DNA of 64,000 nt from Basidiobolus meristosporus CBS 931.73 (GCA_002104905.1 MCFE01000460.1:1-64000), one strand, 5' to 3'. Counted from the first letter of the stretch, positions 30,435 through 47,180 are shown. Made by a program: numbers and translations. The notes: generated from the sequence alone by a model not told the origin.

Positions 30435-33400
30435 GAATGACCTTCTAAAAACGTGGGAGAGGAAGCCTTAAAGTACCAGAAGAAAGAACAAAGTGCCTTT
30501 AACTGCATTTGCCTTAATGCCAAGGACAAATTGCTAATTCAATGCTCAAGAGCAAAAACGGCAAAGAATGCCTGGAAAGCATTGGAAGACACCTACCAGC
30601 CATGTTCAGCTGCCAAGAAAATGTATCTGAGACAAAAATTCTTTACCACAAAGATGCTGCCAGGAGAAGAAATGAAAAATCCAATTAACCAAATTACCCT
30701 GCTGGTAGATAAAATGGAATCTGTGGGTGTACCAACTACTGATGAGGCTGTGTTAGTTACCATCCTCCATAGCCTGACAGATGAGTTTCAGGGCCTTGTA
30801 TCAGCCCTAGAGTCCAGAACTGAAGATTTGACCTTAAATTACATATATGGAAGGCTCCTGGATGAAGAATTAAGAAAATTAAGCGCCAATAAGAAGGAAG
30901 AAGAAAATGCTCTAATAAGCAATGATAACCAACAAAGGAGGTACCCAAGACCCTACAAAGGCAACAGCAACCTGTTTTGTAACTACTGCAAAAGGAAAGG
31001 ACACACATCAGACCGGTGTCTCAAAAAGAGAGATAATCAGCAAAAGAAGCCTGAATATGGAAATGCTGCAACAACTGAAGATAGACTATTCATATCTGCA
31101 CTAAATATGACCACAAACAAGGATTCTCAGACGTGGTATATTGACTCTAGAGCATCTCAACACTTTACACACCAAAAAGAACTTTTTACTCAATATCAAG
31201 AAATTCCAATTAAGAAGGTTTTCATGGGTGACAATAGAACCCTTGATGCAGTGGGAGAAGGAACTATCCAAGTAAACCTTAGAAGCAGTGAAGGAAGCCA
31301 TACACTGACCTTTAAAGAAGTACTCTATGTACCAGAAATAGCCAAGAACCTACTCTCTATAAGTAAGGCCACAGCAGAAGGACTCAGTTTCAGTTTTGAC
31401 AATTCTGGATGCAGGATCACTGATCAAAATGGTGCCCATATTGCTTTGGGCATCAGAGATCAGAATCTATACAAGTTGACTTATATTCCATCATATTTGG
31501 AAGCCAAAAGAAGCAACTTAAATGAAGAAACACCAATGCTTTGGCACAGGAGATTTGGACACATCAATTTTGGTTATTTGCACAAAATGATCAAAGATCA
31601 GCTAATTTCTGGAGTAAAAATTGATCCCCCAGCTAATTTGGAGCACTGTGAAGCCTGCATATATGGGAAACAAGCCAGACAACTGTTCAAGAGCTCTGGG
31701 TTAATCAAAACTAAGAAAAAATTTGATCTAATTCACTCAGATCTGTGTGGACCTATGCAAAATTTATCCTAGGCGGGATGAAGTATTTAATCACTTTTAT
31801 TGATGATTATACAAGATACACATGGGTCTACTTCATGGAGAGAAAGGAAGAAGCTCTGTCTAAGCTCAGGGAGTTTGAAGCCATGGTGGAGAGAGAAACT
31901 GGTGAAAAAATCAAGAAAATATGCTCTGACAATGGTGGAGAATATACCTCAAAACTCTTCATCCACTTCTGCAAGATTCATGGGATAAAGCAAGAGACTA
32001 CTGTACCATACTCCCCACAGCAAAATGGAGTAGCAGAACAAGCTAAAAGATCAATAATTGATATGGCAAGATCTATGATCCATGATCAAAAATTATCCTA
32101 TGATTTTTGGGCGGAATCAGTTGCCACTGCTGTATATCTTAAAAATAGGAGTTATAACAGAATACTTTGTGATTCTACTCCATTTGAAGCATGGTATGGA
32201 TACAGACCAAGTGCAGAACATCTAAGAATATTTGGGTGTACAGCATATGCCAAAAAACTGGCCGGAAATCAGTCAAAATTTGAGCCAAAAAGTATAAAAT
32301 GCATATTTTTGGGCAACTGCAATCAGAGTAAGGCATACAGACTCTACAATACCAAAGCAAAGAAGCTGATCAAGTCCAGGGATGTGTTGTTTGATGAAAA
32401 TTCAAAATTTTCACAAAAAATGACATCAGATGATGACAAAAATTTGATCTAAAGTCTGCTAATTGTCAGGATTGAATCAGAGCAAAACAATGAGAAATTT
32501 TTCACTCCAGAGGACTCTACAACCATGGTTCAGCCAGAATCAGTGCCCAGGAATATCTCAGAAGTGATCATTCCAGTATCAAATGCCTGGAGATCCAATT
32601 GGACAAGAAATAGCCCAAATTACTATATCAATGAGGGTACAAACTTAGCCTATGCCTATTCAGTCCATGTTGATGAACCCCAGACTGTAAAAGAGGCCCT
32701 AAATAGCCCTCAGACAAAATTTTGGAGATCTGCAATGACTGAGGAATATCAGGCCCTGATGGAAAATCAAATTTGGGACTTAGTCAAATTACCAACCAAC
32801 CAAAAATCAATTGGATGCAGATGGGTCTTTAAGACAAAATACAAGGCTGATGGTACAATTGAAAGATACAAAGCAAGACTTGTAGCCAAAGGATACTCTC
32901 AAACAAAAGGACTTGACTATACTGAGACCTTTGCACTGGTAGCCAAGTTTAATTCCATCAGATTAATATTGGCTATTGCAGCCAAATATAAGTTTTTTAT
33001 TCATCAAATGGATGTAAAAGCTGCATTTTTGAATGGAGAACTTGATGAGAACATGTATATGGACCAGCCTGATGGGTTTGTTGACCAAGATAACCCCCAT
33101 TTGGTCTGCAAGCTTAAAAAGTCACTATATGGTCTCAAACAATCACCAAGAGCCTGGAATTGCAAGATAGATTCTTATTTGGAATCTTTGAGTTTCAAAA
33201 GAAGTAATGCTGACTATAGTATATACTATAAGCCAGATAGAGCAAATCCAGTTCTATTAGCTCTATATGTGGATGATCTTATTATAGCTACCAATAACCT
33301 AGAAACATTGGAAGAGACTAAATCCAGCCTATCTAAGGAGTTCAAGATGTTTAATCTAGGTGAACTTAATTACTACTTAAGGATTAAGTTCTCCATAGAC

Positions 33401-34257
33401 AGAAGTACCCAGACTATCACCCTAAGCCAATCCAAGTATATTCAAGATATACTAAAGAAGTACAAAATGGAAGACTGTAAACCGGCAGCTACCCCAATGG
33501 AGACAAACCTTAATTTGGTCAGAACTCAACCAAATCAAGAGAGCTTGGTGCCATCTGAAAGCCCTGGCTTTCCTTATCAATCTATGGCCAGCAGTCTGAT
33601 GTATATCATGCTTGGAACACGTCCAGATATCTCATATTCAGTGGGAGTTGTCAGCCAACATAACCAGAACTATGGATCTGATCATATTGCAGCAGTTAAG
33701 CGGATTTTTAGATACCTAAAAGGAACTGCTGATATCTGCTTAAGATACACTTATAATGATTCAGAACAGGGTCTTGTGGGATACTCTGATGCTGATTGGG
33801 GACAAAATTTGGAAGACAGAAGATTCACCACAGGATACACCTTTCTTTACTATAAAGGAGCAATTTTATGGAATTCAAGAAAGCAACCAACCGTAGCACT
33901 TTCTACCACAGAGGCAGGGTATATGGCAGCCTGTGAAGCTACAAAAGAAGCAATGTGGTTAAGAAAGCTGTTTACAGATTTAGGCCTATGTCAAAAAACA
34001 CCTATTACTTTATTTCAAGATAATCAAGGATGTATACAATTAGGTAGAAATCCAACTTTTCATGCTAGAACCAAGCACATAGATATTAGACATCATTTCA
34101 TACGTGAAGCTATAGAGAATAACTTAGTTAGCTTAGTTTACTGTCCTACAGATGAAATGATTGCAGACATATTTACCAAACCATTAGCTAGAGACAAGTT
34201 TGAATATCTTAGGTCAAAATTAGGACTAGTCAGTATGAACATTTAGCTGAGTGGGAG

Positions 34258-43219: not shown

Positions 43220-44463
43220 TTAAAAGTCAATTCTTTGTCCGATCACTGGAAGGATATAGTTCACTCCCAAGTCATTGGTGGCTTTCAGCTCGCGCTCAAT
43301 AGTAAGACGAACGTTGTTGGTGGTGTTGGTGATATCTGGCTTGGTGTGGGTAATGACCACATTCAATCCTCGGAGGGGATTCCTTCCGCCAACGAGGCCG
43401 GCCAATACAAGGAGCTCTTCACGGATGTAGACTGGGGTGAGATGACCGAAGAGGAGGTTGCCTGGGCGAGAAGAAGTGTAGGAGGATTCAATGAAGATAG
43501 CACGTAGTTTTTTGCTGCGAACAAGAGGAGCGGCATGCTTCCACACATCAATAATGCGAGGTAGGGGACCAATGGAGTCTGGTCCAACATCGCCAAAGTA
43601 AATAGCCTCGTCTCCGTTGGCATCATTTCGAATGAAGAAAGCAGTGGAATTGAGTGGTGCTGGTCCGACAGTTCCATGAGTAACAGGGAATGCTGTAGTA
43701 GACATGTTGTTGGGCAAAGGATAGTACTTGCTGTTATCAATAGTCTGATAAGTATATTGCTTAATAGCATAACTGCCTTGGTCACCCATATTAGGCCAGG
43801 CATAGTTGTTGAACACGTTGCTAGGGTTGAAAATTACGGGTCAATAACGGACAGAATAACAATTCTAATGCGAGAAACTTACTTGATGATACTGGATGTA
43901 GTATCATTGATACCGTAAATCGTCTTGCCGCCCTTGTCACCGGCAGTACCAATAACAAATCCACTCATATGATCCAAGTGGCCATGAGAGAACATATAGC
44001 CTTTGATATGGTCACGCATCAATGTACCAGCTGCCACAATGCAGTCCTGGTCAGCATAGGTGCATACAGGGGCGTTAGCGATGCGGCGGAACGCGCCACG
44101 TTCGTAACCCTTTTGGATACCGTGCATTAGGGTTCCAGCTTCAACTGCCATCCAGCCATCGGATGAAGAACCTGCGTAAGGCTTGAATAGGTAACCACTA
44201 ATGTCACTCTCCACTGGACCACCCTCAGAACCAAGCACAACAACTGTGAAACTTGGTTTTAATCCTGAGTAAGCGAGTGGGTCTACCTCGTCAACATCAC
44301 GTTTCAAAAAGTGATTGTTTTCGTGGACTTCGGTCGTGGAGTCAAACACGCCAGCCACATAAAGGAGTCCGGCACCTAGCAGGACATTCATTGCAATACT
44401 GGCAGTGGAGAATGAGAACCATTTGCCACTGCGTTTGGAGGCTCGGGTGTTGGTAGGAAGCAT
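43220..44463 (-). CDS. Class II (metallo-beta-lactamase fold) 3',5'-cyclic nucleotide phosphodiesterase with N-terminal signal anchor, 2 exons
   Basis: FTVVVLGSEGGP, EAGT, FSHGHLDHMSG, VFNNYAWPN, FGDVGPD, AIFIESSY, LFGHLTP and ITHTKP motifs. Intron 43821-43882 (62 nt, GT-AG). ATG at 44463. Confidence 0.93.
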
Positions 44464-45804
44464 GTCAATAATGTTTGTTGGCGTCAGTACCAAGCGCGAT
44501 AGATAGAGGCACTTCAGCGGAATGTGGATTAAGGTTGATTCAAGTTCAGCTCGAATATATATGGAAGCCGGGGTCGATTATCAGTATGTTGATCTGTCTC
44601 GACAAACTATAGGTGGGTTGCTATGCTGAAACCTAGCAAATGAACAGTCCCCAAACCTTGGCAAGAATTGGTTCTCGATGCATGTAAATAACAATGAAAT
44701 GATCTTTGTGCCTGAGAATTCCCTAGATTGTTGATCTACCTTCCTTTTTTAGTAATAGGTCTGTACTGTTGATGATTTGTTGCAACTACGCAGTAGTGAG
44801 GAAAAGGGAATTATATATAAAAGTAGATGAATAGTATCAACAAAGATACATAAATGCTTGAAATAACCAGGCAAGATGACTCAAGTTGTCAAAGTAGAGA
44901 TGGAGCAAGTTGCACGTCTTCTCGATCATCGATGAATTGGAAATTCTGTGTAGCGTACGGAATGGTGGATACGTTTTCAGGTCGGTTTTCAAGCATATGC
45001 GGTGCTTCAGGATAACACCACCTTCCATATTCCACCGAGTTTTCCTGAATACCATCAGTCCGTTGTTCACCAATGGACCCTTTCGGACATATAATGTGAC
45101 CATCATCTGTGGAAACTAGGGCGTCGAATAAAATGGCTGGGATCTCAGTGTAAACTATCATTCAAGTTTTGCATAATCACTGGAATTCCACTTTCACCAG
45201 ACAAGTCACTCAACATTGCAAATCGCCACTATGATGAATCACGTATTAACTCTATTGGCTTTACAAAGTGGACAACGGCTGGAGGGTGATAGTTTTTCAA
45301 CGGTAGCCTTAAGTAAATGGCAACTCTCATAACTTCTCGAGCAGCTATGATTCCTATCGGTGTTCCAGGTTCCATCATTCACGCATATATATCCACGTTG
45401 ATTTTTTAAATGTAACATTTTTTTGGATTGAACATTTAAATCTCACTACTAGATGGTATCTTTTTTCATATCGTTGGAGCGCATCCAGACATCAGCGTTT
45501 AAGAGTTCGTTCTCATTTATAGTATCGTGGATCCATCTGCCAACTTCATTAGCCAATCATCAATGTGTATTATATCTATCTTGTGTAACCAGCGGTGGTA
45601 CCTTCGGATCTTCAATCCCAAGTAGTACACATTCCTGATTTTCCTCATGTCACTAGACTGGTAAACACTTCCCGAAAGATACCATCAACTGGAATATGGA
45701 TATTCATTCGGATAGCATATGCGGCTATTATGGTGAACTCTATACAGTTGGTTGTTTATGAATGAGGCAACAGAATACAGGGGAATAGCTGAACAGGAAC
45801 CATA

Positions 45805-47180
45805 TTAATAATAATAATCGAAATCATAAGGCTCATAATAGGAGTCACATGATGCAGCCAGGTCTACTGATGCGGTATCGGACATGCGTCGATTGTATTC
45901 AACCATTCTAAGATGCTCAGTGTATTCATCGTAATCCGTACCGTCAAACTCTTCCTCTGACGCAGTGATGAAAGGATGTTTGAGTGTCTCGATTGCGCTG
46001 GGCCGTGCTTCGGGATCCGTGGCTAACATGGATTTTAATAGGTCGGCAGCATGGTATATGATCTCTGGATACAGTTTTTGCTCACGGTTGAGCAACAGTT
46101 CCTCCAATGATTCACAAATCATTTCCGTAGTTTGTGCTCTGACCAAATTACTACCAAGGTAATTGAGCTGACAATCTGGAAGGTAGGCCTCAAGCATTTC
46201 CCCAAACAAAATTCCTGCACTATACATATCTGGTTTTGTTCCTTCCGCATTCCCTTCGTACACTTCTGGGGCAATGTATCCTGGCGTACCACAGGGCTCA
46301 TGGGGTTGACCAGAGCAACGACTACACAACCCAAAATCGATGACAACTAGGTGTCCTTCTTGATCTACCATGAGGTTAGCCGGTGTTAGATCCATATGAA
46401 CAATGCCATCTTTGTGCAAGCCCTCAAGAGCCTAGATATATCGATTAGTGAGTGCTTGTGTTTAGGTAATCACAGCCGTACTTCGCCTACCTCCAGTAAA
46501 TCTCGGATCAACCTTTGAATGTCGCGTAGGTTGCGCCTTCCAATCTCCAGGTCTTTTAGTTTGGGAAGTACTATTACAAGTTGACCTTTGTCGTCAAGGT
46601 AGCTATCCTCTATGTGGACTACATGTGGGATGTGACTCACTTGCTGGAGGACTTCGATTTCTTTTTCGGCTAGTTGGCGAGAGGGTACGGTCTTGAAAAC
46701 CACTGGAAAGCAATCAACCAAACGCACACCAAATTCGATTAAGGATAGCTCAGTCTACATATGGGTGTACTGGTTAGACCTGACATGCTGTCGTGAAATC
46801 AATGATAATCTTACCGAAAGCTTTCTAATATTATCATTAACTAAGTATTTTTTCTGATCACGACATGGGAAACGTTCGCAGGGTGCTTTGTATACGTAAT
46901 CATTATCATCTGTACACTTTTGGTCTTCGGGAGAACTTGATTCTTCTTGATTGCATATGATCGGTGAGACTGGCAAATTGGTAGAAGTAGAACGGGAGTG
47001 AGCAAGCTTATGTCGGAGGTTGCGGAAGAGTTTTCGAGAGCTTCTAGGCGACTTTTCAACACTTTGATGGGTGGTAGTGAATTTCTCCTCCGAGAGAGTT
47101 TTCGAGCGACATAGCGGTGGCCTTTCTATACTCGGCATTCCATGGAAGGAGGGGAGATGTATGGACAAGTGACGCAGCAT
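45805..47180 (-). CDS. Atypical protein kinase-fold protein, 3 exons
   Basis: VVFK, EKEIEVL, HMDLTPAN, VIDFG, CGTPGYIAPE, DMYSAG and DPEARPSA. A 60-nt intron (gtaaga...ctaac...tag) removes the apparent stop at 46755; a second intron lies near 46430-46490. Confidence 0.88.

What the first reader, a model, noticed from the sequence alone, without database searches (positions are those of the whole stretch)
43220..44463. Signal-anchored, Kex2-cleavable class II cAMP phosphodiesterase: a fungal ecto-PDE?
Seen: a basic N-terminus (RASKRSGK), a hydrophobic helix of about 20 aa (STASIAMNVLLGAGLLYVAGVF), a short stalk ending FLKR-DV, then a compact class II PDE domain with intact HxHLDH and a single intron. 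Established: Dikarya Pde1 enzymes are cytosolic, whereas Dictyostelium PdsA and Vibrio CpdP are extracellular or periplasmic class II PDEs; KR is the Kex2 site. Inference: a type II membrane protein whose catalytic domain is released outside the cell. It could scavenge or shape extracellular cyclic nucleotides, or interfere with host or bacterial signalling. By eye its motif spacing resembles bacterial CpdP more than yeast Pde1, so horizontal transfer with intron gain is possible.
Basis: partly seen in the sequence, partly recalled or inferred. Interest (0 to 1): 0.7.

Follow-up and report, generated by a model that had tools for sequence, protein, structure and literature searches.

The report
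Membrane-anchored outward-facing fungal cAMP phosphodiesterase
This Basidiobolus gene encodes an intact cAMP-degrading enzyme tied to a membrane by an N-terminal anchor, so that it should face outside the cytoplasm; this layout is shared with chytrids and some amoebae, was lost in yeasts and mushrooms, and was not borrowed from bacteria.

Summary
A two-exon minus-strand gene (44463..43883 and 43820..43220, 62-nt intron, 393 codons) encodes a class II cyclic-nucleotide phosphodiesterase (PF02112). All catalytic residues are intact. A 71-residue N-terminal extension precedes the domain: a basic tail, a hydrophobic helix (about residues 15-40), and an acidic disordered stalk with K54-R55.

The deposited B. 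meristosporus model starts at M25, inside the helix. Comparison with B. ranarum supports the longer model. The ATG is shared, M25 is Leu there, and codons 1-24 have dN/dS 0.21.

The type II (N-in, catalytic domain out) reading is supported, though only by inference. All ten complete non-Dikarya eukaryotic relatives that start at Met carry an N-terminal hydrophobic segment. These are four chytrids, Olpidium, two amoebae, one unidentified eukaryote, Cavenderia and Acrasis. No Dikarya Pde1 does.

Bacterial transfer is not supported. The protein groups with Protostelium and Luapelamoeba (100/96) inside a eukaryotic clade beside Dikarya Pde1, and it shares two eukaryote-type indels. Kex2 shedding is plausible but untested.

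No RNA run was listed. Location, substrate and cleavage were not shown. I class it as a new variant of a known kind, of moderate interest.

The parts
43883..44463 (-). Exon 1 (193 codons plus 2 nt): N-terminal extension and first half of the class II PDE domain
   Evidence: ORF and translation. PF02112 hit at 27.6 bits. Residues 25-193 are identical to the deposited protein P0001.
43821..43882 (-). Intron, 62 nt, GTAAGT...TAG, phase 2
   Evidence: Sequence. The position is shared with B. ranarum while the intron sequence has diverged with indels that are not multiples of three. P0001 spans the junction as ..SSII-N-NVFNN...
43220..43820 (-). Exon 2 (1 nt plus 199 codons plus stop): second half of the PDE domain
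   Evidence: PF02112 at 122.5 bits, E 2.8e-35. Identical to P0001 residues 172-369.
44422..44463 (-). Start codon and basic cytosolic tail (residues 1-14, net charge +4)
   Evidence: This is the first ATG after the in-frame stop. The ATG is conserved in B. ranarum, and similarity collapses immediately upstream. Codons 1-24 have dN/dS 0.21 with dS 0.75.
44344..44421 (-). Hydrophobic segment, residues 15-40: predicted signal-anchor transmembrane helix
   Evidence: Kyte-Doolittle maximum 1.87 over 19 residues. 23 of 26 residues are identical in B. ranarum, dN/dS 0.09. AlphaFold2 predicts a helix at residues 21-40 in the ortholog P0151.
44389..44391 (-). M25, the start codon of the deposited 369-aa model; probably internal
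   Evidence: P0001 starts here. B. ranarum has Leu (CTA) at this codon.
44251..44343 (-). Acidic stalk, residues 41-71, with no Met
   Evidence: Low pLDDT and no regular structure in the models. 20 of 31 residues are identical in B. ranarum, dN/dS 0.25.
44299..44304 (-). K54-R55 dibasic site (F-L-K-R then D): candidate Kex2 cleavage site
   Evidence: Sequence. FLKRD is conserved in B. ranarum. It lies in the disordered stalk. Cleavage was not tested.
43969..43986 (-). H160-G-H162-L-D164-H165, the class II PDE metal-binding signature
   Evidence: Sequence. These are invariant columns H136, H138, D140 and H141 of P0001 across 64 homologs.
44633..44683 (-). Candidate 16-codon upstream ORF inside a conserved block 110-330 nt upstream of the ATG (about 44575..44754)
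   Evidence: The B. meristosporus/B. ranarum DNA alignment shows the same ATG, the same TAG and the same length in both species. The transcription start site is unknown, so its status as a uORF is inferred.

Best explanation
This is a vertically inherited eukaryotic class II (Pde1/PdsA-type, metallo-beta-lactamase fold) 3',5'-cyclic-nucleotide phosphodiesterase.

It is made as a type II membrane protein. A short basic tail stays in the cytosol. One helix (about residues 15-40) acts as an uncleaved signal anchor. The complete catalytic domain (residues 72-393) is translocated into the secretory pathway and ends up at the cell surface.

From there the domain may be shed into the medium by Kex2-type cleavage after K54-R55 in the flexible stalk. 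Outside the cell it would hydrolyse external cAMP, and perhaps cGMP, either for scavenging or to shape an external signal.

Shown here: gene structure, family membership, intact active site, fold, conservation and selective constraint of the N-terminal extension, and phylogenetic position. Inferred: topology, final location, cleavage and substrate.
For: Family and fold:
- PF02112 is hit in both exons.
- All invariant and near-invariant catalytic columns are present.
- The AF2 model has pLDDT 90.3. Its best PDB match is yeast PDE1 4ojv, E 3e-26, TM 0.77.

The N-terminal extension is real coding sequence:
- The B. ranarum ortholog (87% identical, 394 aa) starts at the same ATG, has an in-frame 3-nt indel, and has Leu at M25.
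- dN/dS is 0.21 for codons 1-24 and 0.09 for the helix, while dS is about 0.8-1.
- DNA similarity collapses just upstream of the ATG.

Topology:
- Flank charges are +4 and -1.
- A helix at residues 21-40 with disordered flanks is predicted in P0151.
- There is no Met between the helix and M105, which lies beyond the invariant G78/G81/G82. A cytosolic isoform from a downstream start would therefore lack part of the core.

Comparative evidence:
- Chytrid, Olpidium, Quaeritorhiza and P0010 homologs have N-terminal TM segments.
- The two amoebozoan sisters have signal peptides plus C-terminal hydrophobic tails.
- All Dikarya rows lack any such segment.

Luminal-type features:
- Exactly two Cys (C134 and C141), conserved in B. 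ranarum.
- The Cys found in most homologs (majority IECSY) is Ser here (IESSY).
- Four conserved N-x-S/T sequons.

Origin:
- It forms a clade with Protostelium, Luapelamoeba and P0010 (100/96), inside a eukaryotic clade (99/89).
- It shares two indels with Dikarya and the amoebae.
- Synteny with an upstream kinase gene is kept in B. ranarum.
Against: - No RNA run was listed for this stretch, so the transcription start and expression are unverified.
- No dedicated topology or signal-peptide predictor was available. Hydropathy, charge and AF2 secondary structure are indirect.
- The location could be an internal lumen rather than the surface.
- The KR site is conserved only between two species that are 87% identical, and it is not positionally shared with chytrids or amoebae.
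- The disulfide could not be checked, because no model coordinates were available.
- The sister relation to Dikarya Pde1 is weakly supported (96/62).
- An AU test does not reject placing the protein at the bacterial edge of the eukaryotic group (p 0.369).
- Most 'bacterial' rows are unnamed metagenomic proteins, taken as bacterial from their length, signal peptides and PF12706 co-hits.
Confidence: 0.6

Rival explanations
1. The same enzyme and topology, but it resides in an internal compartment (ER, Golgi, or vacuole/lysosome-like lumen) rather than at the surface. There it would degrade cyclic nucleotides, or other phosphodiesters, that are taken up or turned over.
For: A short basic tail, one TM helix and a stalk is also the standard layout of Golgi and vacuolar type II enzymes (established knowledge, for example yeast Pho8 and DPAP B). 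Nothing or 72 tells surface from lumen. The class II fold is close to other MBL phosphodiesterases.
Against: The characterised signal-bearing members of this family are extracellular or periplasmic: PdsA and PDE7 (PMC11988041) and CpdP (Dunlap and Callahan 1993, cited in PMC4858519). The amoebozoan sisters have GPI-like C-terminal tails, which suggests surface display. No known vacuolar sorting motif was identified, and I did not search for one.
Confidence: 0.2
2. The hydrophobic segment does not lead to translocation. The catalytic domain faces the cytosol, either as an N-terminally anchored protein on an organelle (for example the mitochondrial outer membrane) or as a cytosolic protein made from a shorter transcript. 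It would then act like an ordinary Pde1 on intracellular cAMP.
For: The deposited model starts at M25. The tail, rich in Arg, Lys, Ser and Thr with no acidic residue, superficially resembles a mitochondrial presequence. There is no expression or localisation data. Dikarya Pde1 is intracellular; M. oryzae PdeL is nuclear (PMC2865543).
Against: Even the M25 model begins with a 15-residue hydrophobic, signal-peptide-like stretch. M25 is not conserved. The flank after the helix is acidic rather than basic, the opposite of Tom20-type anchors. There is no usable Met downstream before M105. The TM segment is the most constrained part of the extension. Every complete non-Dikarya eukaryotic homolog keeps such a segment.
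Confidence: 0.1
3. The gene was acquired from gut bacteria (CpdP-type periplasmic PDE) and later gained an intron and a eukaryotic anchor.
For: Pairwise identity to bacterial proteins is 36-41% (Cetobacterium, Sebaldella, a Verrucomicrobia MAG), as high as to the amoebae and higher than to Dikarya and yeast Pde1. The compact length has no Dikarya-type inserts. AU tests do not reject a position at the bacterial edge (p 0.369), nor quite a clade with the Fusobacteria group (delta lnL 40.7, p 0.0625).
Against: The best tree puts it in a eukaryotic clade with Amoebozoa (100/96; the clade against bacteria is 99/89). The His-to-Ser/Thr loop is 7-9 residues, as in Dikarya and the amoebae, against 2-4 in all 36 bacterial-type rows. 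The FFIR-ND two-residue extension is likewise shared with them. A clade with the nearest bacterial group is rejected (p 0.001). It is syntenic and has the same intron in B. ranarum. Chytrids have the same architecture.
Confidence: 0.05

Closest known systems
Dictyostelium PdsA (PDE1) and PDE7, extracellular class IIa cAMP phosphodiesterases
   Same: Same Pfam family (PF02112), with an N-terminal ER-targeting sequence. The catalytic domain is outside the cytoplasm. They are secreted and possibly surface-associated, and act on external cAMP (PMC11988041).
   Different: The dictyostelid homolog in my tree (Cavenderia P0141) groups with Acrasis on the bacterial side, not with Basidiobolus. PdsA has a cleavable signal peptide, whereas this protein has a long signal-anchor plus stalk. 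No PDI-type inhibitor or cAMP relay is known in Basidiobolus.
Dikarya Pde1 / PdeL (low-affinity class II PDE; yeast PDE1 structure 4ojv)
   Same: Same fold (TM 0.77) and the same catalytic residues. It shares the lengthened loop after the catalytic His and the FFIR-ND extension. It is the sister clade in the best tree (96/62).
   Different: Dikarya proteins start at the catalytic domain or have non-hydrophobic N-termini, and are intracellular (PdeL is nuclear, PMC2865543). Many carry large low-complexity inserts, which are absent here.
Class II PDEs of Protostelium nocturnum (P0024) and Luapelamoeba hula (P0009), transcriptome-only and uncharacterised
   Same: They are the closest relatives outside Basidiobolus (41% identity, clade 100/96). 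They are secretory-pathway targeted and share the N-S-[ST] sequon beside the catalytic His.
   Different: They have short cleavable-looking signal peptides abutting the domain, plus C-terminal hydrophobic (GPI-like) tails, instead of an N-terminal anchor and stalk.
Chytrid and Olpidium class II PDEs (Irineochytrium, Phlyctochytrium, Obelidium, Chytriomyces, Quaeritorhiza, Olpidium; genome annotations only)
   Same: The same architecture: cytosolic tail, one TM helix, stalk, PDE domain.
   Different: The chytrids form a separate clade (100/97). They have the short bacterial-length loop after the catalytic His and no conserved KR in the stalk.
Vibrio fischeri CpdP and other bacterial periplasmic class II PDEs
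   Same: Compact domain of about 320 residues ending ..G-x-x-x-x-F. Exported from the cytoplasm. 36-41% identity.
   Different: Sec signal peptide or lipoprotein signal, no intron, and short loops where Basidiobolus has the eukaryote-type insertions. They fall on the other side of the 99/89 split.

Membership tests
Class II 3',5'-cyclic-nucleotide phosphodiesterase (Pfam PF02112 PDEase_II) | Profile score above Pfam's gathering threshold | tested here: met
   Exon 1 scores 27.6 bits and exon 2 scores 122.5 bits against a cut-off of 23.7. The exons were searched separately.
Class II 3',5'-cyclic-nucleotide phosphodiesterase (Pfam PF02112 PDEase_II) | H-x-H-L-D-H signature and the other conserved metal and catalytic residues | tested here: met
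   HGHLDH is at residues 160-165. Columns H136, H138, D140, H141, E281, H296 and K330 are invariant, and H218, D247, D251 and H328 are nearly invariant. All are present in P0001.
Class II 3',5'-cyclic-nucleotide phosphodiesterase (Pfam PF02112 PDEase_II) | Metallo-beta-lactamase-type fold like yeast PDE1 | tested here: met
   AF2 pLDDT 90.3, pTM 0.86. Foldseek top hit is 4ojv, E 3.3e-26, TM 0.77/0.78.
Class II 3',5'-cyclic-nucleotide phosphodiesterase (Pfam PF02112 PDEase_II) | Hydrolysis of cAMP or cGMP | not testable with these tools
   This needs an enzyme assay.
Dikarya Pde1/PdeL (intracellular low-affinity PDE) | Groups with Dikarya Pde1 in a phylogeny | tested here: inconclusive
   The Basidiobolus/Amoebozoa/P0010 clade is sister to the Dikarya clade, but at 96/62 only. 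Two shared indels favour the link.
Dikarya Pde1/PdeL (intracellular low-affinity PDE) | No ER-targeting or membrane segment; the domain starts at or near the N-terminus | tested here: not met
   There is a 71-residue extension with a hydrophobic helix. The yeast Pde1 domain starts at residue 4, which corresponds to residue 72 here. All Dikarya rows scored 0 for a hydrophobic N-terminus.
Extracellular class II PDE of the PdsA/PDE7 kind | N-terminal secretory targeting sequence | tested here: met
   A hydrophobic segment at residues 15-40 with positive-inside flanks. It looks like an anchor rather than a cleavable peptide. No dedicated predictor was available.
Extracellular class II PDE of the PdsA/PDE7 kind | Specific relationship to dictyostelid PdsA | tested here: not met
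   Cavenderia P0141 groups with Acrasis among bacterial-type sequences, across the 99/89 split from Basidiobolus. P0141 is a long branch, so its placement is unsure.
Extracellular class II PDE of the PdsA/PDE7 kind | Activity found outside the cell; DTT sensitivity | not testable with these tools
   The only relevant features are two conserved Cys (C134, C141) and four sequons. No model coordinates were available to measure the Cys-Cys distance.
Bacterial periplasmic CpdP-type PDE (as donor of a transferred gene) | Nests within bacterial sequences | tested here: not met
   The best tree places it in the eukaryotic clade. A clade with the nearest bacterial group is rejected at p 0.001. A clade with Fusobacteria is borderline at p 0.0625. 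The indels are of the eukaryotic type.
Kex2-processed secretory protein | Dibasic K-R in an exposed luminal segment, conserved in orthologs | tested here: met
   K54-R55 lies in the disordered stalk. FLKRD is conserved in B. ranarum. This is weak evidence, because the two species are 87% identical and a chance dibasic site in 31 residues is not rare.
Kex2-processed secretory protein | Cleavage actually occurs | not testable with these tools
   This needs N-terminal sequencing or mass spectrometry of the secreted form.

The most novel reading that the evidence does not exclude
The ancestral fungal (and perhaps amorphean) class II PDE was an outward-facing, membrane-anchored or secreted enzyme. 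Chytrids, Olpidium and Basidiobolus kept this form. The familiar intracellular Pde1 of Dikarya arose by loss of the anchor. If so, early-diverging fungi such as Basidiobolus handle extracellular cAMP, for scavenging in the gut or as a Dictyostelium-like external signal. No such system has been described in fungi.
Probability: 0.3. Interest if true: 0.6.

Novelty: new variant of a known kind. Interest (0 to 1): 0.45.

Why it matters
Fungal cAMP signalling is taught from Dikarya, where the class II enzyme Pde1 is intracellular. This gene and its relatives suggest that, outside Dikarya, the same enzyme family is routinely built to face away from the cytoplasm, as in Dictyostelium and in bacterial periplasms.

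That gives a testable entry point into two questions. One is whether early-diverging fungi sense, shape or feed on extracellular cyclic nucleotides, which is relevant to a gut symbiont surrounded by bacteria and host cells. The other is a clean case of relocalisation of a signalling enzyme by loss of an anchor.

It also corrects a public gene model, which is 24 codons short at the N-terminus. It removes one candidate from the list of bacterial transfers into Basidiobolus.

Tried and rejected
- RNA evidence: the look-up of sequencing runs listed no run for this stretch. The transcription start is untested.
- Bacterial and archaeal genome scan: it gave one locus only, a Verrucomicrobia MAG with 41% identity to exon 2. 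This is useful as an outgroup, not as a donor.
- Profile search with alignment A1 in the word-indexed database: it added almost nothing.
- Search with P0010: it did not reveal that protein's organism. Its best hits are B. ranarum and Luapelamoeba, and its contig carries a fragmented, intron-like Iso_dh gene.
- NCBIfam: no hit.
- ESM Atlas: only generic PF02112 clusters.
- Literature searches: nothing on class II PDEs of Basidiobolus or chytrids, or on fungal ecto-PDEs.
- AU test forcing the protein to the bacterial side of the split: uninformative (p 0.369), because a basal position satisfies the constraint.
- A separate cytosolic Pde1 in this genome could not be looked for. Only this window is readable, and only a receiver-domain PDE is noted elsewhere (s1-233650, unchecked).
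- The Cys134-Cys141 distance could not be measured, because no model coordinates are exposed.
- The joined two-exon protein was deliberately not assembled or typed. The exons were searched apart by reference. The database records P0001 (identical from M25 on) and P0151 (the B. ranarum ortholog) served for the alignments, the folds and, for P0151, the trees.

Full report
**What is there.** On the minus strand lies a two-exon gene. Exon 1 is 44463..43883, the intron is 43882..43821 (62 nt, GTAAGT...TAG), and exon 2 is 43820..43220 including the stop. The product is 393 codons. Each exon hits Pfam PF02112 (class II cAMP phosphodiesterase) above the gathering score: 27.6 bits for exon 1 and 122.5 bits for exon 2, against a cut-off of 23.7. 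The exhaustive protein search with exon 1 returned the deposited protein P0001, named 'cyclic-AMP phosphodiesterase [Basidiobolus meristosporus CBS 931.73]'. P0001 is identical to exon 1 residues 25-193 and to exon 2, which confirms the splice junction. This also identifies the organism independently of the scan's earlier notes.

**The N-terminus.** Residues 1-14 are basic, with net charge +4. Residues 15-40 are hydrophobic, with a Kyte-Doolittle maximum of 1.87 over 19 residues. Residues 41-71 are acidic and contain F-L-K54-R55 followed by D. Yeast Pde1 (4ojv) begins its domain at residue 4, which aligns with residue 72 here, so the first 71 residues are an add-on.

The deposited model starts at M25, inside the hydrophobic segment. 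The B. ranarum ortholog P0151 (394 aa, 87% identical) starts at the upstream Met and has Leu in place of M25. Several features of the DNA alignment of the two loci support the upstream start:
- The ATG is shared.
- There is an in-frame 3-nt indel.
- Third-position changes are synonymous.
- Similarity collapses immediately upstream of the ATG.
- The intron sits at the same position but its sequence has diverged.

Nei-Gojobori estimates give dN/dS 0.21 for codons 1-24, 0.09 for the helix (23 of 26 residues identical) and 0.25 for the stalk. Over the same segments dS is about 0.8-1.0. The extension is therefore translated and constrained, and the public model is probably 24 codons short. Even the short model would begin with a signal-peptide-like hydrophobic stretch, so secretory targeting does not depend on the choice of start. 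There is no Met between the helix and M105, which lies past the invariant glycines G78, G81 and G82. A cytosolic isoform from a downstream start would therefore be truncated in its core.

**The enzyme is intact.** Across 64 homologs, the invariant and nearly invariant columns are all present. These include H136, H138, D140, H141, H218, D247, D251, E281, H296, H328 and K330 in P0001 numbering; add 24 for the full model. AlphaFold2 gives pLDDT 90.3 and pTM 0.86 for P0001, with the first 44 residues disordered. The best PDB match is yeast PDE1 4ojv (E 3.3e-26, TM 0.77), followed by other metallo-beta-lactamase-fold phosphodiesterases. The full-length B. ranarum ortholog folds with a single helix at residues 21-40, disordered segments on both sides (residues 44-67 include the KR site), and the domain from residue 73.

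**Relatives and architecture.** Nothing closer than about 48% local identity exists outside Basidiobolus among the representatives of about 15 billion proteins. These are the named relatives and their N-termini:
- Quaeritorhiza, Irineochytrium, Phlyctochytrium, Obelidium, Chytriomyces and Olpidium have a cytosolic tail, one TM helix and a stalk before the domain.
- Protostelium and Luapelamoeba have short signal peptides and C-terminal hydrophobic tails.
- P0010, an unidentified eukaryote, has a TM segment followed by I-R-R-D-V.
- Cavenderia and Acrasis carry signal or TM segments.
- The bacterial-type proteins mostly carry signal peptides.
- All Dikarya proteins lack any hydrophobic N-terminus. 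The named ones are Lipomyces, Pyronema, Naganishia, Tulasnella, Amanita, Sporobolomyces and Sporisorium.

On the 65-row tree the trait changes six times. One change is the whole Dikarya clade and one is a sequence flagged as partial.

**Origin.** I built a careful maximum-likelihood tree (LG+C20, 65 rows, 329 columns), using P0151 as stand-in for the window's protein.
- Basidiobolus groups with Protostelium, Luapelamoeba and P0010 at 100/96.
- This group is sister to Dikarya Pde1 at 96/62.
- Next comes the chytrid clade at 100/97.
- All of these are split from the bacterial-type sequences at 99/89.

Two indels agree with the tree. The loop between the catalytic His-Gly and the Ser-Thr that follows is 7-9 residues in Basidiobolus, the two amoebae and P0010. 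It is 7 or more in Dikarya. It is 2-4 in all 36 bacterial-type rows, the chytrids, Olpidium, Cavenderia and Acrasis. A two-residue extension after FFIR is likewise shared with Dikarya.

The AU tests give a mixed but consistent picture:
- A clade with the nearest bacterial group is rejected (delta lnL 38.5, p 0.001).
- A clade with the Cetobacterium/Sebaldella group costs 40.7 lnL units (p 0.0625).
- Merely placing Basidiobolus on the bacterial side of the main split is not rejected (p 0.369). That constraint is met by a basal position and says little.

There are three caveats. The groups were named after seeing the tree. Most bacterial rows are unnamed metagenomic proteins. Several rows are long branches. 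The reason is that Dikarya proteins are divergent and insert-laden, not gene transfer. The same intron and the same upstream kinase gene occur in B. ranarum.

**Mechanism.** The most likely reading is a type II membrane protein, N-in and C-out. Its catalytic domain is translocated and displayed at the surface, or shed there, where it hydrolyses external cyclic nucleotides. In support are the positive-inside charge pattern, a helix too long for a typical cleavable signal peptide, and the strong constraint on that helix. Other evidence agrees:
- Secretory signals are conserved in all non-Dikarya relatives.
- The mature part has exactly two Cys (C134, C141), conserved in B. ranarum.
- The usually conserved Cys of the IECSY motif is Ser here.
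- There are four conserved N-x-S/T sequons. One lies beside the catalytic His, where the amoebae and P0010 also have Asn but Dikarya have Asp or Glu.

Characterised family members with export signals act outside the cytoplasm. Dictyostelium PDE1/PdsA and PDE7 are extracellular and DTT-sensitive (PMC11988041). Vibrio CpdP is periplasmic (Dunlap and Callahan 1993, cited in PMC4858519). M. oryzae PdeL, by contrast, is nuclear (PMC2865543).

Kex2 release after K54-R55 is plausible. The site lies in a disordered luminal stalk and is conserved in the sister species. Earlier notes of this scan also describe many Kex2-type precursors in this genome; these are unchecked leads. But conservation between two species at 87% identity is weak evidence, and the site is not shared with other lineages.

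None of the following was shown: topology, final compartment, cleavage, substrate or expression. No RNA run was listed.

**Rivals.**
- Residence in an internal lumen (Golgi or vacuole) has the same topology and cannot be excluded. I give it 0.2.
- A cytosol-facing or cytosolic form is disfavoured by the acidic post-helix flank, the lack of a usable downstream Met, and comparative conservation. I give it 0.1.
- Bacterial transfer gets 0.05.

**Novelty.** Extracellular and periplasmic class II PDEs are known, and so is fungal Pde1. A signal-anchored, outward-facing class II PDE in fungi, shared with chytrids and Olpidium and lost in Dikarya, was not found in the literature I could search. I class it as a new variant of a known kind, with moderate interest of 0.45. 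The bolder reading is that the ancestral fungal enzyme was an ecto-enzyme and that early-diverging fungi process external cAMP. I give that about 0.3.

Noticed in passing
window 44575-44754 (minus strand), with 44633-44683: A block 110-330 nt upstream of the PDE start codon is far better conserved between B. meristosporus and B. ranarum than the 110 nt next to the ATG. It contains a 16-codon ORF (MHR...IC-stop) with the same start, stop and length in both species. It may be a uORF or a promoter/5'UTR element.
   Followed up: partly
window 44389-44463: The public B. meristosporus protein record (369 aa) starts at M25 inside the hydrophobic helix. Comparison with B. ranarum indicates that the true start is 24 codons upstream.
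   Followed up: yes
window 45833-47180 (minus strand): A protein kinase gene upstream of the PDE gene is syntenic with B. ranarum (about 70% DNA identity to L004:930-2325). Downstream of the PDE gene, no similarity between the two species was found.
   Followed up: partly
L001:10-1161: A Verrucomicrobia MAG contig encodes an intron-less class II PDE with a signal-peptide or lipoprotein-like N-terminus. It is 41% identical to exon 2 and was the only hit in the bacterial/archaeal genome collection by the peptide-pattern scan.
   Followed up: partly
P0141 (Cavenderia fasciculata) and P0144 (Acrasis kona) in the tree: The dictyostelid PdsA-like protein and a heterolobosean PDE group together (100/99) among bacterial-type sequences. 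They sit apart from the Protostelium/Luapelamoeba/Basidiobolus clade. Amoebozoa may therefore hold two class II PDE lineages of different origin. Both are long branches, so this is unsure.
   Followed up: no
window 32525-34246 (plus strand): A long ORF (573 aa) that looks like a Ty1/copia-type reverse transcriptase/RNase H. The window alternates GC-poor (about 38%) and GC-richer (about 50%) stretches.
   Followed up: no
L002:43-1221 (P0010, Logan SRR32476553): An unidentified eukaryote encodes an intron-less, TM-anchored class II PDE with I-R-R-D-V just before the domain. Its best matches are B. ranarum and Luapelamoeba, and its organism remains unknown.
   Followed up: partly
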